Virus record (IMG/VR): IMGVR_UViG_3300019458_000020
Location: 62,001 to 126,000 of that record
Strand: one strand, 5' to 3'
DNA length: 64,000 nt
The number at the start of each line of letters is the position of its first letter. The first letter of the stretch is position 1. This document shows, one piece after another, positions 8,469 through 41,380 of this stretch. The notes under the pieces are model-generated. The model had not been told where the DNA came from. It made no database searches and worked only from the letters and a program-made list of their open reading frames with translations. The position numbers and the translations under genes are program-made.

Positions 8469-10649
8469 ATGCGCTACGAGCTTTCCCAATTAAATGATTT
8501 AGACGACGAGGTAAGAGAAAAGTTGTCGGCTCTTAGTTTAGATACAGGAATGATGAATTCTATAGCGTCGGAACCAACCATTGAACATCGACCAGTTAGT
8601 GTGGCATATACCGAAGCCGGAGAACCTATAGGATGGGCGACGATATTAGAAACTGGACTCAAAACAATTGGTGCAGAAAGAAGAAAATCAGCATATATCG
8701 GAGTTTACGTTCATCAAGATTATCGAAGATTAGGTGTAGGAACAAAATTGGTCAAAGAATTATTTAAATTATTAAAACGAGAATATGAATATATAGTTGT
8801 TTCTCCACATGACGAAAAAAGCCATCACTTCTTTAAAAATCACGACATCGACAGTTGGGAAGACCGCTCAAAATATTTTGATACAGGAAATTACAAACAA
8901 GGATTAATTAAATTAAAAGAAATTATCTATGAATCCAAAGAAAGCTTCTTTGTTTTAGGTAGAGTTTCGGAGGATGGTGAGGTTGACAAATACGAATTTC
9001 GTGACACAATTACAGACGTACACCCGAGTTCTTGGCGTTCCTCTCATTATAAACTGTGGAGATACTGGAATGTCACTAAAATAGTGTATTGGTGGGAATC
9101 TCCAACCGATGTAGAGAAAGAGGGTGTAGAGTATTTCTTGGGTAGAAAAGGGTACGATATTCAAGGAAATAAATACATGATTCACATGACGCCGGATTTT
9201 AACAAATTATCAGGACATAAGGTTATGGAAACTAAATTGAATGAAGGAAAAAAAGAGAAAGCAGCAGAAGATTTCATTAGGAATATTATTAAAGGAACCG
9301 AATGGGAAGGAAAAGTCTTTATTGCTGGTGGATATGTCCGTGATGAATTTATGGGTAAAGATCCAAAGGATTTAGACCTTCTCGTAAATGCACCTAACGG
9401 CGGAATTGAATTTGCAAATTGGATAACCAAGAAAATTGGTGCCCATTCTGACGGCAATCCGGTTACATTCCCCCGATTCGGAACAGCCAAATTCAATCTC
9501 CGTGGAGTAATCCACGATGGTATTGATTTGAGTGGAATGGATATCGAAGCTGTAATGCCAAGAAAAGAACAATATACCGCTGGAAGTAGAAAACCTGATG
9601 TCACCGGTGGAGATTTAAAAGATGATGTTGAAAGACGAGATTTTACTGTTAATTCGCTATTAAAGGATTTAAGTAGTGGAGAAATTTTGGATTTAACTGG
9701 AATGGGTAAAGATGATATTCGTAAGGGAATTGTTAGAACTCCATTAAATCCAGATAAAATTTTTACTGATGATCCTCTTCGAATGTTAAGAGCTGTACGG
9801 TTTGCAATGAAATATAAATGGAAACTTCCGATGTTTATGTTACGTGGATTGAAGAAAAACGCGGAACAACTTAAAAACATTTCTCAAGAAAGAATCAGAG
9901 ATGAATTGGATAAAATGTTAATGACATCGAATCCACATGGAGCCATCAAATTGATGAAAGTAGTAGGATTACTAAAATACGTTATTCCAGAACTACAAGC
10001 TGCAATCAAAATGACTCAGAACGTTCATCATAAAGATGACGTATTCGACCATATTCTTGATGTTCTATCGAAATCGAATCCCGTATTGGTTCAACGATTA
10101 ATGGCCTTATTTCACGATATTGGAAAGACGGTTACAAAGAGTGTAACACCAACAGGTGTTCATTTTTATGGTCATGAGATGGCCGGTGCAGATATGGTTG
10201 AAACCATCATGACACGATTAAAATATCCTAGAGAATTAATTGATGCAGTAAAACTTGGTGTAAGAAACCACATGAGATTAAAATCAGCTGGTGATACAGG
10301 TGTTAATATTTCCGACAAAGCACTTAGAAAGTTTAAGACAGAAATCGGTGACGAACTTGAAAACGTATTAAGTGTTATTCATGCAGATAATATTGCACAC
10401 GCCGATGCATCATCAATGCCTAATCAGATTAATAATCTAAAAAAGAGATTAGATAATCTAAACATGAATGTTTCTGCTCAAGGAAAACCAAAACTTCCTA
10501 TTAGTGGAAAAGACTTACAAGATATAGGTCTAAAACCAGGACCAATATATAGTGAAATTATGAAGGCAGTCACGGAATCTTGGTTCGAAAATCCAAATAT
10601 AACTAAAGAACAAGCTATTCAAATTGCTAAGTCGATGGCAGGAATATGA
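8469..10649 (+). CDS. cca: GNAT + unknown domain + CCA-adding tRNA nucleotidyltransferase with HD domain (fusion or polyprotein)
   Basis: GNAT motif A VHQDYRRLGVGTKL; class II NTase motifs IAGGYVRD, KDLD, ERRDFTVN, DDPLRMLRAVRF, SQERIRDEL; HD domain DVFDH...LFHDIGK. Confidence 0.85.
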   Translation: MRYELSQLNDLDDEVREKLSALSLDTGMMNSIASEPTIEHRPVSVAYTEAGEPIGWATILETGLKTIGAERRKSAYIGVYVHQDYRRLGVGTKLVKELFKLLKREYEYIVVSPHDEKSHHFFKNHDIDSWEDRSKYFDTGNYKQGLIKLKEIIYESKESFFVLGRVSEDGEVDKYEFRDTITDVHPSSWRSSHYKLWRYWNVTKIVYWWESPTDVEKEGVEYFLGRKGYDIQGNKYMIHMTPDFNKLSGHKVMETKLNEGKKEKAAEDFIRNIIKGTEWEGKVFIAGGYVRDEFMGKDPKDLDLLVNAPNGGIEFANWITKKIGAHSDGNPVTFPRFGTAKFNLRGVIHDGIDLSGMDIEAVMPRKEQYTAGSRKPDVTGGDLKDDVERRDFTVNSLLKDLSSGEILDLTGMGKDDIRKGIVRTPLNPDKIFTDDPLRMLRAVRFAMKYKWKLPMFMLRGLKKNAEQLKNISQERIRDELDKMLMTSNPHGAIKLMKVVGLLKYVIPELQAAIKMTQNVHHKDDVFDHILDVLSKSNPVLVQRLMALFHDIGKTVTKSVTPTGVHFYGHEMAGADMVETIMTRLKYPRELIDAVKLGVRNHMRLKSAGDTGVNISDKALRKFKTEIGDELENVLSVIHADNIAHADASSMPNQINNLKKRLDNLNMNVSAQGKPKLPISGKDLQDIGLKPGPIYSEIMKAVTESWFENPNITKEQAIQIAKSMAGI

Positions 10650-11359
10650 TAAAATTAAAATCTCTCATAAAAGAAGACACAGCATCATGGAAAGATATAA
10701 CCATAGATGATGTCGAAAGTTTATTGTCTTCAAGATGGGTAGATAGAGATTATTCATCTACGTTACGAACCATACAGGATTTTTATTACGATGATGATAA
10801 AAGTAAACAACAACTCATTGTGGAATACTTTGAGTTATTAAATTCGGTGGCTAAATTAGTAATTTCATTGACAAGAAATATTCCACATGTAGATGATAAA
10901 TATATAAAAAGATATCTCTTATCTCAGAATGAATTTCATACATCTCCAGAAGAATTTTTTCCTTTTCCTGTATATGTTTCGGCAACTCCTGGTGACGAAG
11001 ATACTATAGGTATAATGATTGATAAGAATGGAAAAGTATTAGAAATACATGAGGGCAACGATGAATCTTCCTCGGAAACAATCAATATGGTAAATAGAAT
11101 GGTCAATCCTTCCGGAAAAAAAGTAAGGATATATGGGTCACACGATACCAGACTTATTCACGATATTGATGAAAAGGGATACCTACCAAAAAATTTGTAT
11201 GTTTCTCCGGATAAAAATCATGCATCAGGGCATTTGGATTTAAAAGGAGAACGGTCGATGTTTTCGGGAATAATAGATATTAACGGAGTGAGTCAAGAAA
11301 GTGATTTGGATTGGAGAACAATGGATAAAATTAAAATTGAAAAGTTTAGATGGATATGA
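10646..11359 (+). CDS. MIKLK-leader protein; C-terminus possibly a degenerate ADP-ribosyltransferase fold
   Basis: MIKLKSLIKE; RIYGSHD...IDEKGYLP..LYVSPD resembles the ART H/G-G-Y/S strand pattern. Confidence 0.5.
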   Translation: MIKLKSLIKEDTASWKDITIDDVESLLSSRWVDRDYSSTLRTIQDFYYDDDKSKQQLIVEYFELLNSVAKLVISLTRNIPHVDDKYIKRYLLSQNEFHTSPEEFFPFPVYVSATPGDEDTIGIMIDKNGKVLEIHEGNDESSSETINMVNRMVNPSGKKVRIYGSHDTRLIHDIDEKGYLPKNLYVSPDKNHASGHLDLKGERSMFSGIIDINGVSQESDLDWRTMDKIKIEKFRWI

Positions 11360-12558
11360 TTAAGTTAAAAAACATTATACAAGAGGTTCACGAATATCAA
11401 CTCGGAGATGTAATAGTCGGATATATTGATGAAGATGGACACATTATTGCATCAGACAAAGTGAAGGGTCATTCGGTATTATTAGATAAACATCCTTCTT
11501 GGGGGTCGAGAAGAACATATCCTTGGAGATTTAATAAAATCATAAATACTTTGTTCTTTTGGTTTGATAACACACCTGAAAGTATAAAAGAAATGGTTGT
11601 AGATTACTTAAATACAAAAAAATTCAAAGTTAAATCTATTACAACAATTGATGATTTTTGGAGCGATGATCCAAGAAGAAAAAGGTCACTATATCATTCT
11701 CATGGTGGGTCCGGAACATTTGACATTTATAAAGATTTTGCAGAAGAAAATATAAAAGAGGCACCAATTGATACATTTCAAACGATAGGTGATTTTTCAA
11801 AGGGGTCATCTTTTACAAGTAAAGCAGATAGAGCATTGGTTACACATCCTGTAGCAGTGCAAAAAGTAAAAGATTTCTTTAAAAACACTACGGCTAATTT
11901 TGATTTTTATTTCGTTAATACTAAGGATGCAAGAAAATTTACCGAAGTTGGTGAAGTTAAGGAAGACTTCATTTATAAAGACCTTAAAATTCAACCATCT
12001 CAACTAAAAGATGGTAAGATAAATAAAGACAACATAACTGTATTTTTTACCAATAATAAGGGTGCCGAGCGTGCTCCACTAACGCCTTGGATAATGGGCC
12101 ATAGATTTGGTCATGTTGTAAGAAATCTATATTCGTGGAAAGAAGAACTCTCTCCTTGGGTAGAAAGACTATCAGAATATATTCTTGAAGATTATGGAAT
12201 CAAAAAAACTCACAAATGGCATAGCCGGGGGTCTTCAGTAAATAGAGAATATCAAATAGCCATGAGACATCTTTATGAAACCATAGGAACATTCAAAAGT
12301 GCCAGAGATAAAAATCTAAGAGATTATTTTGAATTTCATTATGAATTATTTACGCAGTATTTGAAAGATGGTTCGATAAAATTTAATTCTCTTCCTGATG
12401 TATTGATTGTGGGTCACGGATCATACGGTTCTAAAAAACAAAGACGGCTTTTGAATAGAGAATCAGCCGAAGAAAACTTAGATGAATTGTCTCGTGATTA
12501 TCATTATTATGCCGAAAATGTTTTAAGTGATTGTGTCGGGAAAATTTTTGTCATGTAA
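11356..12558 (+). CDS. MIKLK-leader two-domain hypothetical protein
   Basis: MIKLKNIIQE (ATGA overlap with upstream stop); N-terminal domain paralogous to the middle domain of the CCA ORF; internal IKE/APID junction; HRFGH motif. Confidence 0.6.
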   Translation: MIKLKNIIQEVHEYQLGDVIVGYIDEDGHIIASDKVKGHSVLLDKHPSWGSRRTYPWRFNKIINTLFFWFDNTPESIKEMVVDYLNTKKFKVKSITTIDDFWSDDPRRKRSLYHSHGGSGTFDIYKDFAEENIKEAPIDTFQTIGDFSKGSSFTSKADRALVTHPVAVQKVKDFFKNTTANFDFYFVNTKDARKFTEVGEVKEDFIYKDLKIQPSQLKDGKINKDNITVFFTNNKGAERAPLTPWIMGHRFGHVVRNLYSWKEELSPWVERLSEYILEDYGIKKTHKWHSRGSSVNREYQIAMRHLYETIGTFKSARDKNLRDYFEFHYELFTQYLKDGSIKFNSLPDVLIVGHGSYGSKKQRRLLNRESAEENLDELSRDYHYYAENVLSDCVGKIFVM

Positions 12559-12898: not shown

Positions 12899-12900
12899 GT

Positions 12901-13305
12901 ATGATTAAACTTAAAACATTAATAACCAAAGACATCAAAAAGAGATATTCTGGAATTGAATTGGACAGTGAATCTCACGATCGATTGAAAGAGAAATTTG
13001 CGAAATACATTCCCGAAGGGTGGAAGGTTATTGCCCATCACATGACCATAGACCCGTCCAAAACTTTACCTGAAGAAGAGATTGGAAAAGAAGCAAAATT
13101 AAAGGTGACTCATATAGGAAAGAATGATAAAGCCATGGCCGTAAAAGTTTCAGGTTATGAAGGTAAAACCAATAACAAGTTTCCTCATGTTACATTGGCT
13201 GTTAATGATAAGGCCGGCGGAAAACCAAAAGATTCCAACGAAATAACGGAGTGGGATGATGTAAAAGAAGATATTTATCTTACGGGTATTATAAATAATC
13301 TATGA
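12901..13305 (+). CDS. 2H phosphoesterase (RNA-repair / cyclic phosphodiesterase type) with MIKLK leader
   Basis: Two HxT motifs: AHHMTID and FPHVTLAVN. Confidence 0.75.
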   Translation: MIKLKTLITKDIKKRYSGIELDSESHDRLKEKFAKYIPEGWKVIAHHMTIDPSKTLPEEEIGKEAKLKVTHIGKNDKAMAVKVSGYEGKTNNKFPHVTLAVNDKAGGKPKDSNEITEWDDVKEDIYLTGIINNL

Positions 13306-13595
13306 TTAAACTAAATCATATAATAAATGAGGATAAACGACTATATCGTGGAGATTGTCGAACGATATTAGGTCAAGATGACTTATTTAATGATGCTACT
13401 CAAATGTCTGGTGCTATAGAAAATAGTGATAAAATAGACTATCATACTTTTGGGAATGAAGCCAATTTAACAGGTGCCCCAAGAATGTTTAAATTGAGAC
13501 TCCGAAGAAATACCGATAAATTTGATTTTGGAAAATATAAAGATTTGGTTTGGGCATACGATACAGAAACAGATATTCATTATTTCTTTTTATGA
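13302..13595 (+). CDS. MIKL-leader hypothetical protein
   Basis: MIKLNHIINE; ATGA overlaps on both sides. Confidence 0.6.
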   Translation: MIKLNHIINEDKRLYRGDCRTILGQDDLFNDATQMSGAIENSDKIDYHTFGNEANLTGAPRMFKLRLRRNTDKFDFGKYKDLVWAYDTETDIHYFFL

Positions 13596-14512
13596 TAAAA
13601 TTGTCAACATTATTAGAAGAAATAGAACAAGAAAAGGTCATTGCTGACAAAGTAAAACAATTGGAAGCAGACTTGGAAGCCCAATTTCCGCAAATTCAAG
13701 ACTTGCATTTATTTATTAAATCCAATGGTTCACTTTATATTCAATCGATTCGGATTAAACCAGAAGAAAGAAGAAAAGGAATAGGAAGTCAAATTATAGA
13801 TAAAATTAAAAAATTTGCTGACGGCCATAACTTAACTATTTCTCTAGCTCCTGAACCGGAGCCAAGATATAAAGAAAAACTTCACAAATTTTATAAGAGA
13901 CATGGATTCATTTTTAATAAAGGAAGACATAAAGATTGGCAATTATCAGAACCATTTTCATCTACAATGTATCGAAGACCCCAAAAGGAAGCTATGGATA
14001 CCTCTACTGTAATATCTTCACCAATGATACAACAATCGTTTGATCGTTCTTTCCTGAATTACATGAAAAATGTGGAAAATGGAATTCTTAAAGGATATGA
14101 TAGGAGTAAAAATCTGTGGTTTCCACACGAGTCTTATGAAGGCGGGCTTCCAACAATAGGGTATGGCCATAAGATAAAAACCAAAAACGAATTAAATAGA
14201 ATGAATCGTGGAGTAACCGATTCAGAAATAAATAGGATGTTGACACAAGATTTGGAAACTGCTAAAAAATCTGTCGAAGACTATATTGAAAAAAGATATA
14301 AAGTAAAGCTAATGTTGGAAAAAAATCAACAAGAAATGTTAGTTGATTTTGCATTCCATTTAGGTAGTCTTGATAAGTTCCCTGAATTTACTGAGGCTGT
14401 ATTAAAAAAAGATTGGAATACAGTAAAAAAAGAATATAAACGGCATGCTCGTGGAAAAGAGTTGACTGGTAGAAATGACTCGTTTTACCAACGATACCTT
14501 AAAAATTTATGA
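13592..14512 (+). CDS. GNAT + phage lysozyme (GH24-like) fusion with MIKL leader
   Basis: Likely start ATG 13592 (MIKLSTLLEE); IKPEERRKGIGSQII, KFYKRHGF (GNAT); KNVENG, PTIGYGHK, MLVDFAFHLG (lysozyme). Confidence 0.75.
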   Translation: MIKLSTLLEEIEQEKVIADKVKQLEADLEAQFPQIQDLHLFIKSNGSLYIQSIRIKPEERRKGIGSQIIDKIKKFADGHNLTISLAPEPEPRYKEKLHKFYKRHGFIFNKGRHKDWQLSEPFSSTMYRRPQKEAMDTSTVISSPMIQQSFDRSFLNYMKNVENGILKGYDRSKNLWFPHESYEGGLPTIGYGHKIKTKNELNRMNRGVTDSEINRMLTQDLETAKKSVEDYIEKRYKVKLMLEKNQQEMLVDFAFHLGSLDKFPEFTEAVLKKDWNTVKKEYKRHARGKELTGRNDSFYQRYLKNL

Positions 14513-15045
14513 TACACATTGCAAAATTAGTAACCGAAAAACGAAGTGAATCTTCCATAGATAAAGGATGTTTAATGGCTGATGTATCTCCTGAAATTTG
14601 TAAAAAGTTGGTAGAATTCGGGAAGAAAATTATTCCCGAATCCGATTTATATGTAGAGGGAGACGAGTTTGGAAGAGAATTAGAATGTCATATAACCGTT
14701 TTGTATGGTTTTACTAGAAACCTGACCGAATTAGAAGTTCGTAGAATAATAAACGGTGTAAAACCATTTACTATTAAACTTTCCGGTCTTAGTAAGTTTA
14801 CTCCACCTGAAAAATTTGAAGTAGTAAAGTTTGATGTAGAAAGTGAAATTCTTACTTCCTTAAATAAAAAATGTCAAGAACTTCCTTTTGAAAGTGATTT
14901 TCCAGATTATCATCCCCACTTGACTATAGCATACGTAAAAAAGGGAAAATTCAATCACACCAAAGAAGGATTATCTATAGAAATACCAATTAATAGATTT
15001 ACATATTCAACCGCCACAAAAGAAAAAACCTACTATAATTTATGA
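14509..15045 (+). CDS. 2H phosphoesterase, T4 gp57B/Acb1-like (putative anti-CBASS nuclease)
   Basis: GCLMA, GRELECHITVLYG and DYHPHLTIAYVKKG; leader MIHIAKLVTE. Confidence 0.75.
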   Translation: MIHIAKLVTEKRSESSIDKGCLMADVSPEICKKLVEFGKKIIPESDLYVEGDEFGRELECHITVLYGFTRNLTELEVRRIINGVKPFTIKLSGLSKFTPPEKFEVVKFDVESEILTSLNKKCQELPFESDFPDYHPHLTIAYVKKGKFNHTKEGLSIEIPINRFTYSTATKEKTYYNL

Positions 15046-15452
15046 TACTACTAAAAAATATAGTAGAAGATATTGAAGGCCCAATACCAGACGTGTTGTA
15101 TCATGCAACATTTAACGCATTAATTCCGTCTATATACAAAAAAGGAATAGTACCGTGTGGAGTAAAATATCAGAATTTTGAAGGATGTGAACGTGGTGTT
15201 TACATTTCCGATGATTACGGGTTTGCTGGAAGTATGATTGAAGGTGGGTCGGAAAATGAAGATATACCAGATGAGTGGTTCGATGAAATCGTAGTAATTA
15301 TTATAGACCCACAGAAAATTGATATGTCTAAATTAGAAAAAGACCCACATATTAATTTATCTGCCACGGAGGATGAAATAATTCCAAGGTCGTTTATTTA
15401 TAGGGGAATCATACCGTCGAATTCGTTTATTGAAGTCGTTGATTATCGTTAA
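15042..15452 (+). CDS. ADP-ribosyltransferase-fold protein (Tpt1/KptA-like) with leader
   Basis: LYHATF...SIYKKGIVP...GVYISDD...FIYRGIIP; leader MILLKNIVE. Confidence 0.65.
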   Translation: MILLKNIVEDIEGPIPDVLYHATFNALIPSIYKKGIVPCGVKYQNFEGCERGVYISDDYGFAGSMIEGGSENEDIPDEWFDEIVVIIIDPQKIDMSKLEKDPHINLSATEDEIIPRSFIYRGIIPSNSFIEVVDYR

Positions 15453-17348: not shown

Positions 17349-17380
17349 AGATATTTAACTAAAGAGAATAGAATACAAAT

Positions 17381-18148: not shown

Positions 18149-18156
18149 AAAATAGA

Positions 18157-18186: not shown

Positions 18187-18190
18187 AAAT

Positions 18191-18823: not shown

Positions 18824-18830
18824 AATAATT

Positions 18831-19433: not shown

Positions 19434-19436
19434 TTT

Positions 19437-20703: not shown

Positions 20704-20712
20704 TAATGTGTC

Positions 20713-21932: not shown

Positions 21933-22595
21933 TTACTTGAAATGAAGTTTTTCTTCATTCGCTCTATACCACTCCCATACATTTCGTAACACTTCGGAAT
22001 CATTGTATGATTCTATCAATTTAATTACATCATATTCGTCAGCGATTTTTCCTTGTGAAATACCATCCATTATTATTTCGGCTATAACTTCTTCTTCCAA
22101 CCTTGGAGTAAAATTAATGGGATCAACAATGGGTGCTTGGCTACCTATCTTTCCTTCACCGGATTTGTTTATAAAAGATTTAACTCTAGGATTTTCCAAA
22201 GCTTCCTTGAAGGCTTCTGTCCAAGACCGCATAATTAAATTTCCACATTCCGTGACCCGTTTTGGTTCCTTATGAAGTTTTCTGGCCGCCGATACCCAAG
22301 CTCTCTTAGCAGATTCCGTTCGTTTACGAATTCTTTCGTGATAAATACGAGTAGTGTCATTTGGTTTTCGTAACCCCTTTGTTCTAATAGTCGCCCAATA
22401 ATTTACTGGTTTTTCTGTTTCGGTTATGGTAACAGAACAATAAGATTCTCCGACATTATGATGATTGTTTCCAGCATAAGCAAACCAATCATTTCCTTCT
22501 GTCACTCCGTTCCAAGGAACTAATTCGTGGTCACCAGAAGTCAACGACCCTGGAACACTGAATTCATTCAATAGAATTAGAGTTTTTAATTTCAT
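21933..22595 (-). CDS. MKLK-leader hypothetical protein containing an MCP-like DPINFTPR motif
   Basis: Likely start 22595 (MKLKTLILLNE), 3 nt after TATTTATA. Confidence 0.6.
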   Translation of the reverse strand: MKLKTLILLNEFSVPGSLTSGDHELVPWNGVTEGNDWFAYAGNNHHNVGESYCSVTITETEKPVNYWATIRTKGLRKPNDTTRIYHERIRKRTESAKRAWVSAARKLHKEPKRVTECGNLIMRSWTEAFKEALENPRVKSFINKSGEGKIGSQAPIVDPINFTPRLEEEVIAEIIMDGISQGKIADEYDVIKLIESYNDSEVLRNVWEWYRANEEKLHFK

Positions 22596-22616
22596 GTCTA
22601 TAAATATCAATTCGTC

Positions 22617-23006
22617 TTACCTTCCCTCAAACAATTCAACTTCAACATTATCGGTATCGTTAAATAATCCTTTTGCTTCAGACTCTATCGCCAAATTTTT
22701 GATTTCTCTAGCTTGTTTATTGCTAGGCAATTTACCACTATAATAATCAAAATGTAATATTGAGTCTCTATAATAATTGAAAGTTATTCTTATCCACCCT
22801 CTTTTTAATAATACTTGTCCTGGACTTTCTTCATTATCTATCGTCCAGTGTATATTTGATTTTTTAAGATAATCTCTTGCCCAATTAAAATGTCCATATT
22901 GAGGATTATCCGTATAAACTTGATGAAGCTTTCCGTCCGGATCCATCCACCAAGCTTTAAAAAACTGACCCCAAGTTTCTACAACTATGTTTTTTAGCTT
23001 TATCAT
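22617..23006 (-). CDS. MIKLK-leader hypothetical protein
   Basis: MIKLKNIVVE; WWMDPDG...GH...LLKRGWIRI. Confidence 0.6.
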   Translation of the reverse strand: MIKLKNIVVETWGQFFKAWWMDPDGKLHQVYTDNPQYGHFNWARDYLKKSNIHWTIDNEESPGQVLLKRGWIRITFNYYRDSILHFDYYSGKLPSNKQAREIKNLAIESEAKGLFNDTDNVEVELFEGR

Positions 23007-25108
23007 CAGTCAAAATACTCCACATTAAATGTAGGAGTTTTAGTTAATGCGTCTAAAGACTCCGAAATTCTCTGTTTACTGCTATTATCTATTTTCGTTT
23101 TTAGATAATCCTTTAATGCTATAAGATGTTTACACATTCCGGGAATTTCTCTAGGATTTCTAACGGCCGGTCTTCTGTTGATACATTTGTTTAGACTATT
23201 ATTTCCTATCTGACTGGCATCTTGTTTTGCATCGGCATAAGCAAACCTATATTTAAAATCCGGACAACTACAATCGACCTGACAATCTATATCGGCTGCA
23301 TTATCGGTTGTAGATTCTTTAAAGAATTTTATATTTCCCTGATGAGGATTTCCCGTTCGGCTGGGATTTGATTTATATCGGAAGTTCCAACTTTCTTTGT
23401 TATTTTCCGTTGATACAGGCAAACTTCTTGCTCTTACTGTTTTTGCTCGATTTTTTCTTCCATCCTCACTGGAACGAAGAAGGTCATTATAAGACATTCT
23501 TTCTGTAACAGTTTCTTCTTTTTGTAAAGAAGATTCTGCAACATTTCTTCCTAACAAATTCTTTAATTGAATAACGGGCATATTCAATTTATCAGCAACG
23601 ACCGCCAATTTATTCACCGGAAGTTTTAAAATTTTATGTTTTAATTCTGGGTTCAAATGTAATTGTTGAAGGATTCGTAGTTCTTCATCGGAAGTAGTTT
23701 GTTCTTTATCTACTCCAGTTTTAAAGATTTGGTCATAAGTGAAAAATTCTCCATTATGACCACCGACTTCATATAATATTTCTCTCGGGTTAATTCTTGC
23801 GTGTTTTAGTAAAGCGAACAAATCACGTCTATGAAGTTCAATCATTGATAATTTTTCCCAACACGACATTATTAATTGACCACGAACATTAAATACTCTT
23901 CCGTGTATTAATCTTCTCGACTTTATCGGAGGATAATTTGTATAAAAAGTAAATCCCAAGAGGTTTTCTATGTAACCGAGAATATTTCCGTGAGTAGTTA
24001 AATAATCATCAAGAGAAGGAGGGTCATTGTCTAATATTTCTTGATACGTTTTATTATTTGTAATGATTTTACTACGTTCTGGAATGTAACCAAAATAGGT
24101 ATTACGACCTTCGATGTCTGCTAATATAAACACCATTTCTACTTGGTCGCTGTTTTCCCAAATATCAATTGTTACACCATCAAATTCAAATCCATCAGGG
24201 TCTTCGGTTAAACTCTTTTTGACTGGTTTAAAAACCAAAATTTGTTTATCTCTACGAAGTTTTGCAGCAGCAAGTCTATGTCCACCGTCTATAATAGAAC
24301 CCTGATCGTCAATTACAATCGGAGGAAATTGTTTGTCGGATTGTGATAAAGATTGAACTTTAGTATCACTTATTGACCATTCACTATCTTCAATGGAATT
24401 AGGGTCAACAGCAATTAATTGAAAATTACCATCAACTCTATCATCATCTTCAAATTCATCATGTTGAGAGTGTATATAATTCAAAACATCACCATCCTGA
24501 TAAACACCATTCAATTTAAATTTTTTCCAATCAGGTTCACCACGAACAGAATACCCTCCTTTATTCATCATTGGGTAATCTATTTTTTCTACTTCGTTAA
24601 TTTCATCGTCATCAATGATTTCTCCATCCCATTCTCCATGATATATACCTTCGGATAATTCTTTGGTTAATTCTCTCCAATGACCTGTTTTTTCATTAAA
24701 CCATGTATCACCGTTAGAATCATAACGAGTTTTGGTGTCTTCATTATAAACAAAAATTTCTATTGGAACGGTTATTTCGGATTCACTATAAAAATCTCCT
24801 GATGATTGTTGGTCCGGAGTCAAAAGATTAATGTCATATTTAATTCTTAAAATAGGACGATATCTATTTGGATGGTTATTTCTCCATAAAATATTTCCGT
24901 AATAATTTGCAGAACGAAATTTAGAAGCAAGGAATATCTTTCCAAAACTCCATTTACCCAACTCTCCACCCCAATTTGTTTCTTCAGATGGTTGTAGCCC
25001 ATTTTTTTGAATAGAAGGAAGGCGGTCAGCCAATGTGGCATGATAAAAATAATGAATATTTTTATTTTCTTCCAGTATTTCATTAAGAATAGAGGACAAT
25101 TTAATCAT
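23006..25108 (-). CDS. multidomain leader protein: ART-like + ParB/Srx-like + unknown + SWIM Zn finger
   Basis: Likely start 25108 (MIKLSSILNE); FYHATL..IQKNGLQP..KIFLA; FPPIVID..IIDGGHRLAAA; VDCSCPDF...MCKHL. Confidence 0.7.
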   Translation of the reverse strand: MIKLSSILNEILEENKNIHYFYHATLADRLPSIQKNGLQPSEETNWGGELGKWSFGKIFLASKFRSANYYGNILWRNNHPNRYRPILRIKYDINLLTPDQQSSGDFYSESEITVPIEIFVYNEDTKTRYDSNGDTWFNEKTGHWRELTKELSEGIYHGEWDGEIIDDDEINEVEKIDYPMMNKGGYSVRGEPDWKKFKLNGVYQDGDVLNYIHSQHDEFEDDDRVDGNFQLIAVDPNSIEDSEWSISDTKVQSLSQSDKQFPPIVIDDQGSIIDGGHRLAAAKLRRDKQILVFKPVKKSLTEDPDGFEFDGVTIDIWENSDQVEMVFILADIEGRNTYFGYIPERSKIITNNKTYQEILDNDPPSLDDYLTTHGNILGYIENLLGFTFYTNYPPIKSRRLIHGRVFNVRGQLIMSCWEKLSMIELHRRDLFALLKHARINPREILYEVGGHNGEFFTYDQIFKTGVDKEQTTSDEELRILQQLHLNPELKHKILKLPVNKLAVVADKLNMPVIQLKNLLGRNVAESSLQKEETVTERMSYNDLLRSSEDGRKNRAKTVRARSLPVSTENNKESWNFRYKSNPSRTGNPHQGNIKFFKESTTDNAADIDCQVDCSCPDFKYRFAYADAKQDASQIGNNSLNKCINRRPAVRNPREIPGMCKHLIALKDYLKTKIDNSSKQRISESLDALTKTPTFNVEYFD

Positions 25109-26679: not shown

Positions 26680-28395
26680 TTAGACTTGGTCCAAATCAGC
26701 AATCAACACACGGCCATAAAATTCCGGCCTTACCATCTTCTTGGCATAACGTGTCATTACGCCCCGGCGGGGAGTAAAGTTCACCGGGTCATAGACCAAC
26801 GGCGTTTGCACCAATGGAATATAAGGAGCGTAAACAGCACCAGTTTCGAGGAAGTTATTTCCACGGAAACCGACGAGGATTACGTTATCCGTCATGTATG
26901 GGTTCTTGTAAACTTGGAATCGGGACGCGAACGTTCCGACACGGCTTACACCCATTGCGAACTTGGCTTGGTCGCCATCCGTGCTGACCACGTATCCAGG
27001 GATGGATTCGAGAATCGTAGCAACGTCTGGGGAACAAACGAGGAAGTTAGCACCACCACGAAGAGTCAATTGGTGAATCCTGTTGGATACCTTTTGAATC
27101 TTGTTACCGAGGGTTTGATACCAAGTTGACTTGGTGTAGTAACCACCGGTTCCAGCAGTCGTTTGATCAACAGCTTGGAAGGTACCACCGACACGAACGA
27201 TTTCACGGTTGAGGCGTGCGCTCCAACGTTCAGTCGTTACAGCTGGTGCATTCGTCAATAGCATGTCGAGGATTTCGAGGTCGATTTCCATCGAGACGTA
27301 TTCAGACAATAATGCAGTCAATTCTGCTTCTGCGTCGATGCTGTGGTAAGCATTCAAGTCTTGAGCGAGCTCAGGGGTCCAAGCAGCTTTCAACTTACGA
27401 GTCTTAGCAACGATAGGTTCGCTCTTGAGTTCGAGGTTGACTTCAGGAATACCGATGTCTTTGTTAAGACCAGTATCCGTAGCAGTCGTCGAAGCACCAA
27501 GATTGTCTTCAAAGTCGCCACGAGCATTATCACGAGGTTGTACCGAGTAGGTGATAGCAAGACCACCGACTGAACCTGTCGTTGAGAATGGGTTCGTTGT
27601 GGTCGAGGCCGATACAACGAATACAACTTCCGAACCGTTAACTTTCGTCAAGGCTGGGAACCAGGTTCCAATGCTTGAACCAGAAACGGTGAACGAGCGA
27701 ACACCGTTAAGATCGATTGGATTACCAGCAGCCAACGATGCCGAGTAAAGGTTTGTGGTAGTAATCTTGTAAAGATGACCAGCAGCCAACGATGCCGAAA
27801 TGACTACCATTTCAGGTGAGGCGTTACCAGTATTCCAGTTGATATCTTCGGCCGAAGCAGAAGCTACCGTGCTGGAGACGCTAGGAGCACCCTTGTCGTT
27901 GATAGAATATCCGAAGCGACCAGCGCCATAAAGACCGCCGGTTGCCGAATCAGTAGAACCGAGCTTGGTGCCCGTACCACCGAACAACGAAGAATAGACA
28001 GAACCACCGAGCGAGCCCGTGGTATCTCTCTGGAACAAACCTTGGGTCGTACCATACTTGAAGTCCAAGTAGAATACCAATCCGGAAGGAAGGTTCATAG
28101 GTTGAACGGAGACGAACTCCTTAGCAGCGAATTCTGCGAATACACGACGAACGAGTGGGAGAGCTACGCCTGCCCATTGTTCGCTGTTTGCCGAAGTACC
28201 AGTGTTGGTAACTTCATCAATGAGTTGCTTTGCTTGGTTTTCAAGCAAAACAGCCATGTTCGACTTTTCAATGTCGTTTTTCAATCCATCGAGAAGACCG
28301 GTTTTGTCCCAACGGGTCACAAGACCACGGGTTTCTTGCATCAGTCTAGCTTGTGGATTGAGAGTATTGGTTAACAGTTGTTTAACGTTTTCCAT
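26680..28395 (-). CDS. gp23: major capsid protein (T4 gp23 family)
   Basis: LLENQ, LPLVRRVF, VSVQPMNLPSGLVFYLDF, AKTRKLKAAWTPELAQDLNAYHSIDAEAEL, VYAPYIPL, FTPRRGVMTRY. Confidence 0.97.
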   Translation of the reverse strand: MENVKQLLTNTLNPQARLMQETRGLVTRWDKTGLLDGLKNDIEKSNMAVLLENQAKQLIDEVTNTGTSANSEQWAGVALPLVRRVFAEFAAKEFVSVQPMNLPSGLVFYLDFKYGTTQGLFQRDTTGSLGGSVYSSLFGGTGTKLGSTDSATGGLYGAGRFGYSINDKGAPSVSSTVASASAEDINWNTGNASPEMVVISASLAAGHLYKITTTNLYSASLAAGNPIDLNGVRSFTVSGSSIGTWFPALTKVNGSEVVFVVSASTTTNPFSTTGSVGGLAITYSVQPRDNARGDFEDNLGASTTATDTGLNKDIGIPEVNLELKSEPIVAKTRKLKAAWTPELAQDLNAYHSIDAEAELTALLSEYVSMEIDLEILDMLLTNAPAVTTERWSARLNREIVRVGGTFQAVDQTTAGTGGYYTKSTWYQTLGNKIQKVSNRIHQLTLRGGANFLVCSPDVATILESIPGYVVSTDGDQAKFAMGVSRVGTFASRFQVYKNPYMTDNVILVGFRGNNFLETGAVYAPYIPLVQTPLVYDPVNFTPRRGVMTRYAKKMVRPEFYGRVLIADLDQV

Positions 28396-28435
28396 ATTTT
28401 TATCTCTTTTCTCTTTCAGTTAGTTATACTCGCTA

Positions 28436-29815
28436 TTACTTTTTTGGTGGCTGAGTCTTGATTCCTGCGAGTTTCTTGAATCGAGATGCCATGTCTGCTC
28501 CTTCCGAAAGAATTTCTTTCGATGGAGCGGTTGACGCCACCGGCTTGGATGCAAGTCCTTCGGTGATCTTAGCGACTTGAGCAGGAGCTTTCACTACTGG
28601 CTTCTTGTCTGCTGCCTTAGGGGCAGTTTTTGCACCGAAACTTAGGGACTCAGCCAAAACGGCATAAGCCAATTTCACTTCACGAACAGTCTTCGTAAGG
28701 TCAAAGTGTTCTACGATCTTCATTCTCATTTCACGATCGAGAGAGCCTGCGTATTCTTTAAATAGCTTGTTCGTGTAAAGCAATTTAGCATTCAACAGGT
28801 TGACCTCATTAATTTGTCCTTGTAGGAATTCAACGGTGTCGCTGTGTTCCTTTAAGGATGCCTTGAGTTGAGCATTTTCGTTTTTCAACGTTTCAACTTC
28901 GTGCATCTTGTGGGTACCGTCCAAGTCAGAGCCGCCGTGATTCTTATCACCGACTTTGGCCTTGGCCATGTCTGCGGAATCTTTAGCTTGTCCTTTATCT
29001 GGAGCTGGCATACCTTCCTTAGCACCTTCCGACATATCTTCCTTATCCTTTTTGTCATCCTTCTTCTCTTCATCCTTGTCGTCTTTCTTGTCTTTTTTGA
29101 GCCAAGGTGGGAGCTTTCCTTCGGTGACTTCCTCTTCAACTTCGTTCAACGAAGCGATGAGTTCTTCAAGGTTAATATCTTCTTCTCCTTCTGGTGCTGG
29201 AGCATCTGCTGGAGGCATTTCTCCGACAGGTGGGGCAACAGGAGGCATTTGAGCTGGTGGAACGTCTCCTGCAACAGGAGGCATTACTGGTGCGGGTGCT
29301 GGGCATCCACAATCACCGGCTGCTGGTGGAATTACTGGAGCAGGGGCTGCAGCGACATCAGGAACAGGTTCTCCTTCAGCATCATCAGCAACTTCGGCTT
29401 CTAATTCTGCAATAATTTTATTTAAATCTTCAGAAGTAAGTCCAGCTTCTTCAACATTTTCATCAACTGGGACTTCTTCGGTTTCACATACAGGCTGGCT
29501 AAGCTTTCCAACTCCGTCTGGACCAACACCAGCTTGAACTGGCTTCATTGGGGTTCCGCTGCTCATCTTCTTTGGTTGTCCCTTTGAGACATCCTTGGTT
29601 GATACGGCTTTGGATACGTTATGGGGAGCTTCAACTTCAGCAACTGGTTCAGCTGCTTCCTGTTGTTCTTCTGCTTCTTCCTTTAGTTTATCAGCAAACA
29701 TTGCGTGAAAACGAGGAGCGAAGGCTTCTTCGAGAGCAATCTTAGCATTGGCGAGAGCAGTGGCTCTTATTGCCTTTGCATCAGCAATTGCTTCTTTCAA
29801 CATATCGCTTGTCAT
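28436..29815 (-). CDS. prohead core scaffolding protein (gp22-like)
   Basis: Directly upstream of MCP; acidic, Pro/Ala-rich; LKEAIADAKA, INEVNLLNAKLLYTNKLF, C-terminal RFKKLAGI; likely start 29815. Confidence 0.75.
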   Translation of the reverse strand: MTSDMLKEAIADAKAIRATALANAKIALEEAFAPRFHAMFADKLKEEAEEQQEAAEPVAEVEAPHNVSKAVSTKDVSKGQPKKMSSGTPMKPVQAGVGPDGVGKLSQPVCETEEVPVDENVEEAGLTSEDLNKIIAELEAEVADDAEGEPVPDVAAAPAPVIPPAAGDCGCPAPAPVMPPVAGDVPPAQMPPVAPPVGEMPPADAPAPEGEEDINLEELIASLNEVEEEVTEGKLPPWLKKDKKDDKDEEKKDDKKDKEDMSEGAKEGMPAPDKGQAKDSADMAKAKVGDKNHGGSDLDGTHKMHEVETLKNENAQLKASLKEHSDTVEFLQGQINEVNLLNAKLLYTNKLFKEYAGSLDREMRMKIVEHFDLTKTVREVKLAYAVLAESLSFGAKTAPKAADKKPVVKAPAQVAKITEGLASKPVASTAPSKEILSEGADMASRFKKLAGIKTQPPKK

Positions 29816-30026
29816 AATAGTTATAGGTTTCCTATGGGTTTCTGAAGTCATTAAAAAACTTCAATGAAGTCTATCGTAAATCGATTAGCCATTCAGCTAA
29901 ATCGTTAGGCGGCAAATGGGGTTGCTGCATTTCTATTAGATAAATAGTGCGAAAAATCAAAAAATACAAAAAATCTTTATAAAATCAAAACATACTTATA
30001 GTATGGATGTAATTTTTTAATCTATT

Positions 30027-40342: not shown

Positions 40343-41380
40343 TTAGATGGTGTAATCAATCGGTTCTTGGGGTTTAGAATTGACTACTTGGGAAGATAAT
40401 TTTCTTATACGAGAAAGATTCTTAATGATGATTCGGAGTTTTGTAAAAATGTCATGAAAGTCATTTTTGATTGGGTATTTTCCAACTTTATCTTTTATAA
40501 GATTGACAATTTCTCCGATATCCTTGTTTGAGATGTCTATTCCTAACGCATGTGCCGTATTTCTTAAAACCTTTATAATAGGATTATACGTAGTATTTAA
40601 GAAGGATTGTAACATTCTAGCAATCGTCTGTTTCTCTTCGTCTGTTAAATTGGCTATAGTCTTAGGAAGAACAATTCTTGGTGTTTCTTCTCCGATATTT
40701 AAATCTTCCAATGATGCTTTAAGATCAGCTGGCAAATGGTCTAAAACGATCTTTAGATTTTTATTTTTACTCGAAATTAAATTATCAAAATAAGACTTCA
40801 AATATTTTCCCATTTTGAGAACATCTTCCGAAGGTTGTTGCACATTGGATTTTGGCATACCTGCTGGAGCTGATGGTTTTGGAGAATTCATCTGATTGAT
40901 GTATGTGATTACATCATCATAGTCTTTATAGAAATCGGTTAATGCCTGTAATCCATTATTAGTTAATTCGATTTCAGGATGATATCCATTCTGTTTTAAT
41001 TTTATGGCAGCCTTGGTAGGGTCATCCTTTATACCAAAATAATCAAGAATTTCTTGAGTTGCGTTTTGCCACTCTTTAGAAAGTTGATTGGCGAATTTAG
41101 AAACGTTTGCGTCTTTCCAATCGGTATGAATTTCTTTAGCTTTCTTTTTAATGTCATCAAACCAACCTTCGTATAAGGATTCGGTTATATGAATCTGTTT
41201 TAAAATATTATCAACCACCGACTCAAGAGGACGATATTCTGGTTTTGATTTGATGTATTTTTGAAGCTTCTGTAGAATATCAATTTTTTTGCGGTTGTAT
41301 TTATTAATAATCTGTGTTACAACCACATCTTCATGTTGAACTTCTTGAAGTCTTGCCTTCATTTTATTCCATGTTTCCAA
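40343..41380 (-). CDS. hypothetical helical protein (possible internal head protein)
   Basis: Overlaps the protease gene end; RLQE and SLYE/GWFD are candidate cleavage sites. Confidence 0.55.
   Translation of the reverse strand: METWNKMKARLQEVQHEDVVVTQIINKYNRKKIDILQKLQKYIKSKPEYRPLESVVDNILKQIHITESLYEGWFDDIKKKAKEIHTDWKDANVSKFANQLSKEWQNATQEILDYFGIKDDPTKAAIKLKQNGYHPEIELTNNGLQALTDFYKDYDDVITYINQMNSPKPSAPAGMPKSNVQQPSEDVLKMGKYLKSYFDNLISSKNKNLKIVLDHLPADLKASLEDLNIGEETPRIVLPKTIANLTDEEKQTIARMLQSFLNTTYNPIIKVLRNTAHALGIDISNKDIGEIVNLIKDKVGKYPIKNDFHDIFTKLRIIIKNLSRIRKLSSQVVNSKPQEPIDYTI

What the first reader, a model, noticed from the sequence alone, without database searches (positions are those of the whole stretch)
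14509..15045. Acb1/gp57B-like anti-CBASS phosphodiesterase carrying the packaging leader
Seen: HITVLYG and HPHLTIAY 2H motifs with the GRE.ECH context typical of gp57B-like proteins, behind a MIHIAKLVTE leader. Established: Acb1 degrades cyclic di- and trinucleotides. Inference: a version delivered from the virion.
Basis: partly seen in the sequence, partly recalled or inferred. Interest (0 to 1): 0.6.

Follow-up and report, generated by a model that had tools for sequence, protein, structure and literature searches.

The report
Address-tagged 2H phosphodiesterase in jumbo phage
A jumbo phage gene encodes a real two-histidine (2H) phosphodiesterase carrying a 10-residue tag, shared with at least 11 unrelated enzymes, that resembles the phage T4 signal for loading proteins into the capsid; its neighbours suggest RNA-end repair at least as strongly as destruction of CBASS immune signals.

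Summary
Window 14509-15045 (+) is a 178-aa ORF with H61-I-T and H137-L-T motifs, a confident 2H fold, and the N-terminus MIHIAKLVTE.

The genome is an uncultured T4-superfamily jumbo phage (about 341 kb, cave metagenome). It has a gp21-type prohead protease.

The leader matches the T4 capsid-targeting sequence in layout: hydrophobic residues at 4, 7 and 8, and Glu at 10. Twelve ORFs carry it, all within 40 kb around the head genes. They include a PARP-like ADP-ribosyltransferase (ART), a GNAT-lysozyme, a second 2H-like protein and a Tpt1/KptA-like ART. The tag is kept at the peptide level, not the DNA level. It is present, truncated or absent among orthologues, and leaderless forms start right after the predicted cleavage Glu. 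Packaging is therefore well supported but unproven.

Acb1 membership is borderline. Pfam Acb1 scores 29.9 bits (cut-off 27), below the generic 2H family at 41.8. Structure ties LigT with Acb1.

The clade is large (6,872 clusters). It is often fused or adjacent to CCA-adding enzyme, ART and CPD-like domains, the "polyvalent protein" 2H. Context favours cyclic-phosphate clean-up of RNA ends over anti-CBASS action, but neither is excluded.

The parts
14509..15045 (+). Target ORF, 178 aa: leader plus 2H phosphodiesterase
   Evidence: Pfam 2_5_RNA_ligase2 scores 41.8 bits, Acb1 29.9 and LigT_PEase 26.5. AF2 pLDDT is 89. VIA-align Z is 15.1 (1iuh) and 14.2 (7t26).
14509..14538 (+). 10-residue leader MIHIAKLVTE; the predicted protease site is V8-T9-E10, cut before K11
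   Evidence: Residues 1-16 are disordered in the model. The same tag sits on 12 ORFs. Orthologues keep it. The layout matches the T4 capsid-targeting sequence (PMC9026906).
14689..14700 (+). First catalytic motif H61-I-T63-V
   Evidence: H61 and T63 are invariant in alignment A1.
14917..14928 (+). Second catalytic motif H137-L-T139-I, in the context F131-P-D-Y134-H-P-H137
   Evidence: H137 is invariant. hhalign to T4 Acb1 gives E 2e-5 over this 33-column block.
15042..15452 (+). Leader-tagged 136-aa ART resembling the NAD+ lobe of Tpt1/KptA; its start overlaps the target's stop (ATGA)
   Evidence: The five best PDB profile hits are all Tpt1, best E 0.008. AF2 pLDDT is 77. VIA-align Z is 12.2 to Tpt1, against 9.2 or less for other folds. 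Ten of 11 homologues keep the leader.
13592..14512 (+). Leader-tagged GNAT acetyltransferase plus phage lysozyme, 306 aa
   Evidence: Pfam Phage_lysozyme 3.9e-11 and Acetyltransf_7 3.8e-8. It matches positions 2689-2916 of a 3925-position PHROG profile, a giant protein.
13302..13595 (+). Leader-tagged 97-aa protein of unknown function
   Evidence: Its domain is fused behind a target-like 2H in P0136 and L018.
12901..13305 (+). Second, unrelated 2H-like protein (134 aa) with a leader variant ending K10-D11
   Evidence: Pfam tRNA_lig_CPD scores 24.7 bits against a cut-off of 23. Residues 13-132 are found fused to target-like 2H in 8 large proteins, E 1e-21 to 1e-33. The L004 orthologue has E10.
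11356..12558 (+). Leader-tagged 400-aa protein of unknown function
   Evidence: All 7 distinct homologues in related loci carry the leader.
10646..11359 (+). Leader-tagged 237-aa protein of unknown function; first tagged gene of the string
8469..10649 (+). GNAT plus class II CCA-adding enzyme with HD domain (726 aa). It has no leader here and heads the same overlapping gene string.
   Evidence: Pfam PolyA_pol 7.7e-19, PolyA_pol_RNAbd 1.2e-15, HD 1.1e-6 and tRNA_NucTran2_2. This domain is fused to target-like 2H in 17 representatives.
41364..41990 (-). gp21-type prohead protease
   Evidence: Peptidase_S77 at 80 bits, E 2e-22.
41987..42997 (-). Leader-tagged 336-aa Pro/Ala/Glu-rich protein immediately upstream of the protease, in a prohead-core position
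49204..50160 (-). Leader-tagged PARP-like ADP-ribosyltransferase next to the large terminase gene
   Evidence: Pfam PARP scores 28.6 bits against a cut-off of 26.7, E 1.2e-6. The leader is MIRLKSLLQE.
21933..25108 (-). Three further leader-tagged ORFs: 220 aa (variant leader), 129 aa and 700 aa
30647..30946 (+). Leader-tagged 99-aa ORF
26680..29851 (-). gp23-like major capsid protein (26680-28395) and an acidic scaffold-like protein (28436-29851)
   Evidence: phrog_138 at 7.3e-71. The capsid protein has [LI]-x-E sites at E52 and E61. The scaffold-like protein has 12 such sites.

Best explanation
The ORF encodes a catalytically intact 2H (HxT/HxT) metal-independent phosphodiesterase. It belongs to a very large phage clade whose members elsewhere are domains of giant 'polyvalent' proteins.

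Its first 10 residues are not part of the enzyme. They are an address tag built like the T4 capsid-targeting sequence: hydrophobic at positions 4, 7 and 8, and Glu at 10. The inferred steps are these. The tag takes the precursor into the prohead core. The gp21-type protease (window 41364-41990) cuts after Glu10. The mature enzyme (about residues 11-178) stays in the head and enters the cell with the DNA. The other tagged enzymes travel with it: a Tpt1/KptA-like ART, a PARP-like ART, a GNAT-lysozyme and a second 2H-like protein.

In the cell it most likely opens cyclic phosphates, either 2',3'-cyclic-phosphate RNA ends or ADP-ribose 1'',2''-cyclic phosphate. It would work with the adjacent KptA-like ART and a CCA-adding enzyme, giving ligase-independent repair of tRNA 3' ends cut by host defence RNases.

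Shown here: the ORF, the motifs, the fold, the shared tag, the protease, and the conserved fusions and adjacencies. Inferred: packaging, cleavage, injection and substrate.
For: Enzyme. The two HxT motifs are invariant across 28 homologues. The model is confident. 2H folds match at Z 12-15.

Tag. Twelve ORFs carry it, all between window 10646 and 50160. Its codons vary synonymously and the upstream DNA is not conserved, so selection acts on the peptide. A 64%-identical relative keeps it on the whole syntenic cassette. Related IMG/VR loci carry it on up to 9 ORFs per 20 kb.

The tag is modular. The Maribacter phage Molly and LR756508 homologues lack it. Close orthologues occur with a full, truncated or absent tag. 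The leaderless form begins with Met plus the residues that follow the predicted cleavage Glu. Fusion proteins match ORF 12901 only from residue 13 onward.

Other leader classes are also shared between 2H homologues and their neighbours.

T4-type head machinery is present. TerL is 52.8% identical to that of Microcystis phage Mel-JY01, within a T4-type terminase family. There is a gp23-like capsid protein, a portal and a Peptidase_S77 protease. [LI]-x-E sites occur in the capsid propeptide region and in the scaffold-like protein.

T4 rules from the literature (PMC9026906; PMC3012670). Ten residues suffice for targeting. Positions 4 and 7 target, and positions 8 and 10 govern processing. gp21 cuts after L/I-x-E. 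Internal proteins share only the capsid-targeting sequence. Alt is a packaged ART.

Substrate context. The downstream gene is Tpt1/KptA-like. A CCA-adding enzyme heads the gene string. That enzyme lies within the fetched locus (up to 10 kb of flank) in 27 of 86 related loci, abuts the 2H in 9 and is fused to it in 3. It is fused in 17 of the 67 representatives of 300 aa or more, among the 146 top hits retrieved. A CPD-like domain is fused in 8. ART-PolyVal plus 2H fusions exist, as does a leader-2H-ART fusion in L073. The KptA-2H and CCA repair logic comes from PMC9503650 and PMC7824862.
Against: There is no direct evidence of packaging or cleavage. The phage is uncultured, and no RNA or proteome data were found.

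The target has Val, not Leu or Ile, at the position two residues before the cleavage Glu.

The CCA enzyme of this phage lacks the tag.

No shared late-promoter motif was found.

The KptA-like protein covers only the NAD+ lobe (Tpt1 residues about 84-181). It probably lacks most of the Tpt1 catalytic tetrad.

The RNA ligase genes lie more than 80 kb away.

By sequence profile, the nearest solved relatives are Acb1-group enzymes: 9q2g at 7e-6 and 7t26 at 1.5e-4, against LigT-like at 1.7e-4.

Iyer et al. 2017 proposed RNase or signal-degrading roles for this kind of 2H.
Confidence: 0.4

Rival explanations
1. One reading: an Acb1-like enzyme that degrades cyclic di- and trinucleotide immune signals (CBASS, possibly type III CRISPR). 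It would be pre-loaded in the virion, so the signal is destroyed from the first moment of infection.
For: Pfam Acb1 passes its cut-off, 29.9 against 27 bits, and 26 of 28 homologues hit it at E<=1e-3. The best solved-structure profile hits are Acb1-group enzymes. The block F131-P-D-Y-x-P-H-x-T-x-A-Y matches T4 Acb1 F107..Y118. Of the base-stacking residues of Acb1 (PMC9117128), F97 stands at W74 and is invariant, F131 stands at F107, and both are aromatic. FBB1 Acb1 gives the lowest rmsd, 2.6 A over 134 of 137 residues, Z 14.2. Phage 2H phosphodiesterases are diverse and many cleave immune messengers (Doherty 2025). Iyer 2017 proposed nucleotide-signal degradation for polyvalent-type 2H domains.
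Against: The generic 2H family outscores Acb1, whereas T4 Acb1 hits only Acb1, at 202.7 bits. P0016 and P0025 fall below the Acb1 cut-off. tblastn finds no T4-like Acb1. Tyr12 aligns with Leu22, and no C-terminal lid, Trp147 or Glu141 could be aligned. The C-terminus is modelled as an ordered strand. LigT-type structures score as high or higher. The conserved partners (CCA enzyme, KptA-like ART, CPD-like domain) have no known link to cyclic-oligonucleotide signalling.
Confidence: 0.3
2. The leader is not a capsid address. It could be a short amphipathic helix that brings the split enzymes together in the cytoplasm, replacing the covalent link of the polyvalent fusions. It could also be a translation or stability element. 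The enzyme would then act only after synthesis during infection. This rival concerns location only and is compatible with either substrate.
For: The same domains occur as single polypeptides elsewhere, so co-localisation seems to matter. The genes are translationally coupled through ATGA overlaps. Leaderless orthologues exist, so the tag is dispensable for catalysis. No late promoter was found.
Against: The tag also sits on a protein directly upstream of the prohead protease, and on an ART next to the terminase gene. Position-specific features match the T4 capsid-targeting sequence and the gp21 site. All tagged genes cluster around the head module. Leaderless forms begin exactly after the predicted cut.
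Confidence: 0.25
3. An offensive or other 2H activity. One option is a Usb1-like 3'-end RNase acting on host RNAs. Another is a 2'-5' oligoadenylate phosphodiesterase. Either would be injected as part of host takeover.
For: Usb1 structures match at Z 13.8-14.3, and viral 2'-5' phosphodiesterases at Z 11-12. Iyer 2017 favoured these roles because this kind of 2H never sits with RNA ligases.
Against: Sequence identity to Usb1 is only 7-8%. Association with a CCA-adding enzyme fits repair better than attack.
Confidence: 0.1

Closest known systems
T4 internal proteins IPI-III and Alt, with their capsid-targeting sequence (CTS)
   Same: A roughly 10-residue N-terminal tag is the only thing shared by otherwise unrelated proteins. 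Positions 4, 7 and 8 are hydrophobic and position 10 is Glu. A gp21-type (S77) protease is encoded nearby. One tagged protein is an ART, like Alt. The tagged genes form a variable cassette.
   Different: The tag sequence differs: MIKLKxLIxE here against MKTYQEFIAE in T4 (quoted from my own knowledge of the T4 literature; no tool result here printed it). At least 12 genes are tagged, far more than in T4. The cargo is enzymes (2H, ARTs, GNAT-lysozyme, and the CCA enzyme in relatives) rather than small inhibitor proteins. Packaging and cleavage have not been demonstrated.
Acb1 (T4 gp57B, Erwinia phage FBB1 Acb1, Burkholderia phage BCSR5 PDE-9)
   Same: 2H fold, the HxT/HxT tetrad, the F/Y-x-D-Y-x-P-H-x-T-x-x-Y block, and aromatic residues at the W74 and F107 positions.
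   Different: The HMM score is weak. There is no Tyr12 equivalent and no alignable C-terminal lid. The protein is about 25 residues longer, with an extra ordered C-terminal strand. The gene context is different. T4 Acb1 is not known to be packaged.
LigT/ThpR-type RNA 2',3'-cyclic phosphodiesterases and the KptA-2H end-healing route
   Same: These give the best structural Z scores (1iuh 15.1, 5h7e 14.9, LigT 14.1). A KptA-like ART is adjacent, there is a second CPD-like 2H, and a CCA-adding enzyme is in the operon.
   Different: No RNA ligase or polynucleotide kinase is nearby. The KptA-like partner lacks the RNA-binding N lobe. After the second motif the sequence has Tyr; my recollection that LigT-type enzymes have Arg there rests on my own knowledge and was not tested here.
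Polyvalent proteins of phages and conjugative elements (Iyer et al. 2017)
   Same: The same 2H clade and the same partner domains (ART, GNAT, peptidoglycan hydrolase, nucleotidyltransferase). Both are predicted to be delivered with the DNA at the start of infection.
   Different: Here the domains are separate genes, each with its own tag, instead of one giant polypeptide. Delivery would use the T4 route (CTS plus protease) rather than fusion to MuF or portal domains.

Membership tests
2H phosphoesterase superfamily | Two H-x-T/S-x motifs | tested here: met
   H61-I-T63 and H137-L-T139 are present. H61, T63 and H137 are invariant and T139 is conserved in at least 90% of the 28 homologues.
2H phosphoesterase superfamily | Two-lobed alpha+beta 2H fold | tested here: met
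   AF2 pLDDT is 89. 100 PDB chains match at Z>=8, and all 50 entries listed are 2H proteins.
Acb1 (Pfam PF23474) | Scores over the family's curated cut-off and as the best family | tested here: inconclusive
   Acb1 scores 29.9 bits against a cut-off of 27, but PF13563 scores 41.8. T4 Acb1 scores 202.7 on PF23474 alone. Two clade members fall below the cut-off.
Acb1 (Pfam PF23474) | Base-stacking aromatics Y12, W74, F107 and W147, and the adenine contact E141 (PMC9117128) | tested here: inconclusive
   W74 aligns with F97 and F107 with F131, both aromatic. Y12 aligns with L22. W147 and E141 are not alignable. This comes from a forced hhalign and is low-confidence outside the second motif.
Acb1 (Pfam PF23474) | Flexible C-terminal lid closing over the ligand | tested here: not met
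   The C-terminus (residues 173-177) is modelled as an ordered beta strand with pLDDT about 95. The only disordered segment is N-terminal residues 1-16.
Acb1 (Pfam PF23474) | [quoted passage not shown] | not testable with these tools
   This needs an enzyme assay.
LigT/ThpR RNA 2',3'-cyclic phosphodiesterase | Family HMM and fold match | tested here: met
   LigT_PEase scores 26.5 bits against a cut-off of 23.3, on a half-domain model. Z is 15.1 to 1iuh and 14.1 to E. coli LigT. This does not separate LigT from Acb1.
LigT/ThpR RNA 2',3'-cyclic phosphodiesterase | Genomic link to RNA repair partners | tested here: inconclusive
   A CCA-adding enzyme is adjacent or fused in many relatives, and a KptA-like ART is adjacent. 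However, RNA ligases lie more than 80 kb away and RtcB is absent.
T4-type CTS-bearing packaged proteins | Roughly 10-residue N-terminal tag shared by unrelated proteins of one phage | tested here: met
   Twelve ORFs carry it. Selection is at the peptide level. Orthologous cassettes conserve it.
T4-type CTS-bearing packaged proteins | Hydrophobic residues at 4 and 7; L/I-x-E at 8-10 | tested here: met
   The target has I4, L7 and V8-T9-E10. Most tagged ORFs have [LIV]-x-E ending at residues 9-12. The target's Val at residue 8 is a conservative departure.
T4-type CTS-bearing packaged proteins | gp21-type prohead protease in the genome | tested here: met
   Peptidase_S77 scores 80 bits at window 41364-41990.
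T4-type CTS-bearing packaged proteins | Presence in virions with the tag removed | not testable with these tools
   The phage is uncultured. Only DNA runs from a cave metagenome were found.
Polyvalent proteins (Iyer 2017) | Many disparate domains in one polypeptide | tested here: not met
   The window protein has a single domain. However, 67 of 146 top representatives of its clade are 300-2332 aa long, with CCA-nucleotidyltransferase, ART-PolyVal, CPD-like or GNAT domains.

The most novel reading that the evidence does not exclude
A large clade of uncultured T4-superfamily jumbo phages uses a simple, sequence-readable address code (MIKLKxLIxE and lineage-specific variants). With it they load a whole kit of enzymes into the capsid: 2H phosphodiesterases, KptA- and PARP-like ARTs, GNAT-lysozyme, and in relatives the CCA-adding enzyme. 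This would be the split equivalent of a polyvalent protein. The injected repertoire of such phages could then be read directly from genome sequence. It would also mean that tRNA-end repair or signal-degrading enzymes arrive ready-made with the DNA.
Probability: 0.35. Interest if true: 0.8.

Novelty: new variant of a known kind. Interest (0 to 1): 0.6.

Why it matters
If the tag is a capsid address, it predicts from sequence alone which proteins uncultured jumbo phages inject. It would link two known ideas, the T4 capsid-targeting sequence and polyvalent injected proteins, as alternative routes to the same end. It would also show that a widespread phage 2H clade acts at the moment of entry. That clade has 6,872 clusters, and its substrate is unknown. 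The cassette gives a defined set of enzymes whose joint activity can be rebuilt in vitro: the 2H, a CPD-like 2H, a KptA-like ART and a CCA enzyme. That experiment can decide between tRNA-end repair and immune-signal degradation. The finding also warns against naming every phage 2H enzyme "Acb1".

Tried and rejected
Structure could not settle Acb1 against LigT. Foldseek E-values are 7e-7 to 1e-6 for both, and VIA-align Z scores lie within 1 unit.

BLAST-level searches found no T4-like Acb1 relative. The annotated phage hits (Maribacter, Microbacterium, Rhodococcus) are labelled RNA ligase or 2'-5' RNA ligase superfamily; one Tunturiibacter hit lies under a Nudix gene and five uncultured records carry no annotation.

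The T4 late promoter TATAAATA occurs 18 times against 9.3 expected. It is not placed consistently before tagged or structural genes, and reading the upstream regions showed no shared motif. Expression timing is therefore unresolved.

A DNA-repeat origin of the leader is rejected. Codons differ and the upstream DNA is unrelated.

The leader as the enzyme's own N-terminal lid, as in PDE-9, is unlikely. The same peptide sits on unrelated proteins, and leaderless orthologues exist. Residues 11-19 could still act as a lid.

ORF 12901 is not a paralogue of the target (BLASTP E 0.35).

RtcB and Rnl1 families were not found in the record. Rnl2-type ligases are present but distant.

The search of sequencing runs gave only two DNA runs from a cave metagenome and no RNA. 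I did not lay reads.

The supplement of Doherty 2025 does not list Maribacter or flavobacterial phage proteins.

I did not run complex prediction. A 10-residue tag against a disordered scaffold would not give a usable answer.
Full report
**What is there**

Window 14509-15045 (+) is an intact 178-aa ORF. Its start overlaps the stop of the previous gene, and its stop overlaps the start of the next, in both cases through ATGA.
- MIHIAKLVTE at residues 1-10.
- G55-R-E-L-E-C-H61-I-T-V-L-Y-G.
- H135-P-H137-L-T-I-A-Y.

Pfam places the protein in the 2H clan: 2_5_RNA_ligase2 at 41.8 bits, Acb1 at 29.9 (cut-off 27) and LigT_PEase at 26.5. An AlphaFold model built on 28 homologues has pLDDT 89. Only residues 1-16 are disordered.

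**The genome**

The window is part of a 250,813-bp IMG/VR record. The identical protein also occurs on a 340,916-bp contig. GC content is 35%, and the DNA comes from cave metagenomes.

The large terminase is T4-type. It is 52.8% identical to that of Microcystis phage Mel-JY01, 52.6% to Flavobacterium phage immuto, and 46.8% to the 484-kb uncultured phage LR756508.

The window holds T4-like head genes:
- A gp23-like capsid protein and a portal.
- A Peptidase_S77 (gp21-type) prohead protease at 41364-41990.
- An acidic scaffold-like protein directly before the capsid gene. It has 12 [LI]-x-E sites.
- The capsid protein itself has such sites at E52 and E61, where T4 gp23 loses its propeptide.

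**The leader**

Twelve ORFs of the record begin with M-I-K/R-L-K-x-L/I-I/L/V-x-E, and all lie between window 10646 and 50160. The pattern hits 11 of 493 first ATGs. It hits 1 of 988 internal ATGs, and that one is a true start two codons into an ORF.

Seven of these ORFs are consecutive, overlapping genes (10646-15452), and the target is the sixth. Codons for the tag differ between genes and the DNA upstream is unrelated, so the peptide is what is conserved.

The tagged proteins are unrelated to one another:
- A PARP-like ART beside the terminase gene.
- A GNAT-lysozyme.
- A second 2H-like protein with a tRNA-ligase-CPD signature.
- A 336-aa Pro/Ala/Glu-rich protein immediately upstream of the prohead protease.
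- The gene after the target (see "What the neighbours say").

In T4, ten N-terminal residues suffice to load a protein into the head. Positions 4 and 7 govern targeting, and positions 8 and 10 govern processing. gp21 cuts after L/I-x-E. The internal proteins share nothing but this sequence, and the packaged ART Alt is processed by the same protease (PMC9026906; PMC3012670). The tag here has the same length and the same pattern: I4, L7 and V8-x-E10 in the target.

**Comparative evidence that the tag is a separable module**

- A relative with 64% identity keeps the whole cassette, each gene with its tag.
- Among 80 IMG/VR loci (at least 516 contigs encode a relative), the same tag sits on up to 9 ORFs per 20 kb.
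- The 2H orthologues occur with a full tag, with a stump (M-L-I-N-E, M-L-L-V-E, M-L-T-E) or with none. The leaderless form is Met followed by exactly the residues that come after the predicted cleavage Glu.
- The Maribacter phage Molly homologue and the LR756508 homologue start at the first strand of the fold.
- Fusion proteins match ORF 12901 only from residue 13 onward.
- More distant homologues carry other leaders (for example M-x-F-x-S-F-K-N-W-L-x-E) that they share with the gene upstream.
- In a crude test, 16 of 49 distinct loci had a neighbour whose N-terminus matched that of the 2H protein.
- Of 59 solo representatives of the clade, 43 have [LIVMF]-x-E ending at residues 7-16, against 34.5% of other ORFs in the same loci.

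None of this shows packaging directly. It does show a modular, lineage-specific N-terminal address with a boundary where a gp21-type protease would cut.

**Is it Acb1?**

The evidence does not decide.
- T4 Acb1 scores 202.7 bits on the Acb1 model and hits nothing else. The target scores 29.9 and is outscored by the generic family. P0016 and P0025, two of the three further clade members scanned singly, fall below the Acb1 cut-off.
- A profile of the clade finds Acb1-group structures first, but LigT-like proteins follow closely: 9q2g at 7e-6, 7t26 at 1.5e-4, then LigT-like at 1.7e-4.
- Structure comparison is a tie. Thermus LigT-like 1iuh gives Z 15.1, Deinococcus CPDase 14.9 and FBB1 Acb1 14.2, the last with the lowest rmsd (2.6 A over 134 residues).
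- hhalign against T4 Acb1 is significant only around the second motif (E 2e-5, 33 columns).
- In a forced alignment W74 and F107 have aromatic counterparts (F97, F131), but Y12 falls on L22. The lid residues W147 and E141 cannot be placed, and the C-terminus is modelled as an ordered strand.
- Doherty et al. 2025 show that phage 2H enzymes form several structural groups with different substrates, and that some cleave none of 18 messengers tested.

**What the neighbours say**

The gene after the target (15042-15452) also carries the tag, and it resembles the NAD+ lobe of Tpt1/KptA.
- The five best PDB profile hits are all Tpt1.
- The model matches Tpt1 at Z 12.2, against 9.2 or less for any other fold.
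- It lacks the RNA-binding lobe.

The gene string is headed by a GNAT plus a CCA-adding enzyme with an HD domain.

The clade as a whole is large: 6,872 representative clusters at E<=1e-3. Of the 146 top-listed representatives whose sequences I retrieved, 67 are 300-2332 aa long. In these, the target-like 2H is fused to:
- the CCA-adding nucleotidyltransferase in 17 proteins;
- the ORF 12901-like CPD domain in 8;
- GNAT in 4;
- the ORF 13302 domain in 1;
- ART-PolyVal in several.

In related loci the CCA enzyme lies within the fetched locus (up to 10 kb of flank) in 27 of 86. It abuts the 2H in 9 and is fused to it in 3. It often bears the tag itself. One relative (L073) has tag, 2H and ART in a single chain.

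This is the 2H type that Iyer et al. 2017 described in polyvalent proteins. They predicted that these are injected with the DNA, and noted that they never sit with RNA ligases.

The established KptA-2H route runs as follows. A 2H enzyme opens an RNA 2',3'-cyclic phosphate. KptA then removes the 2'-phosphate as ADP-ribose cyclic phosphate, which a 2H enzyme opens in turn (PMC9503650, PMC7824862). Together with a CCA-adding enzyme, this would make a ligase-free repair route for clipped tRNA 3' ends.

**Verdict**

The leader is best read as a capsid-targeting, protease-removed tag; I put this at about 0.65. The protein is one piece of a split, individually tagged version of a polyvalent effector.

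For the substrate I lean towards cyclic-phosphate clean-up with the KptA-like ART and the CCA enzyme (about 0.45). An Acb1-like signal-degrading role comes second (about 0.3), and RNase or 2'-5' activities trail.

I file it as a new variant of known kinds (T4 capsid-targeting-sequence cargo and polyvalent-type 2H), not as a demonstrated Acb1.

Noticed in passing
L006 (phage T4 NC_000866) 5592-6411: T4 gene 57B (Acb1) lies directly beside ipI. T4 Acb1 residues 1-8 (MMEFKDFS) lie outside the Pfam Acb1 model and resemble the N-terminus of IPI (MKTFKEFT), a capsid-targeting sequence. No L/I-x-E site follows before the catalytic core.
   Followed up: partly
window 12531-12898: This looks like a decayed gene inside the tagged cassette. 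A 51-aa fragment matches the start of a 230-aa gene that is intact in the relative L004 (2214-2906). The rest is broken into short frames.
   Followed up: partly
window 44420-47539 (-): The portal protein is 1039 aa long and has an HNH endonuclease segment (about residues 200-302) ahead of the portal domain (residues 400-844).
   Followed up: no
window 4564-5298 (-), 26059-26634 (+), 50766-51416 (-): Three ORFs have GIY-YIG-like N-termini (judged by eye). One lies on the opposite strand beside the capsid gene, and one lies between terminase-side genes. They are likely homing endonucleases.
   Followed up: no
window 3907-4263 (-), 4265-4591 (-), 43000-43473 (-): A second shared N-terminal motif class, [LI]-I-K-E-C-[IV]-x-E-V-L-x-E, appears on three small proteins. 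One of them lies between the portal and the protease, where T4 has the prohead core proteins gp67 and gp68.
   Followed up: no
window 16440-21930 (+): There are arrays of paralogous structural-looking genes with repeated N-termini (MSVKI.GATSN..AEVD and M.FEFVAKNGI.SKGNVQVTGSV). They are probably fibre or decoration proteins.
   Followed up: no
L048 9938-10013: Upstream of the 2H start (M-L-I-N-E...), the same frame reads K-I-K-L-F-D-N with no stop codon within the 20 in-frame codons read upstream and no ATG back to the previous stop. This looks like a leader whose start codon was lost.
   Followed up: partly
L014 (LR756508.1) 2181-11224: Five paralogous proteins of 250-283 aa start with M-K/R-L/F-K-x-L/V-L-x-E. 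They surround a leaderless 2H homologue that sits next to a 1017-aa ORF that by eye looks like a DNA polymerase carrying an inserted (possibly intein) segment. By eye they have Y-R-G and S-T-S motifs like Alt-type ARTs; this was not tested.
   Followed up: no
L005 8803-14107; L007 8654-10546; L009 6731-11166: A distant subfamily of the 2H clade sits in a conserved position in L005 and L007, after a gp5-like baseplate gene (Phage_base_V); in L005 and L009 it is followed by a protein of about 1100 aa. In L007 and L009 it shares a different leader (M-x-F-x-S-F-K-N-W-L-x-E) with the gene upstream.
   Followed up: partly
G000 161176-161643, 234631-235137, 211299-211745: Two Rnl2-type RNA ligase (PF09414) genes score above the family cut-off and a third match scores below it. 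All lie far from the cassette. RtcB and Rnl1 were not found.
   Followed up: no
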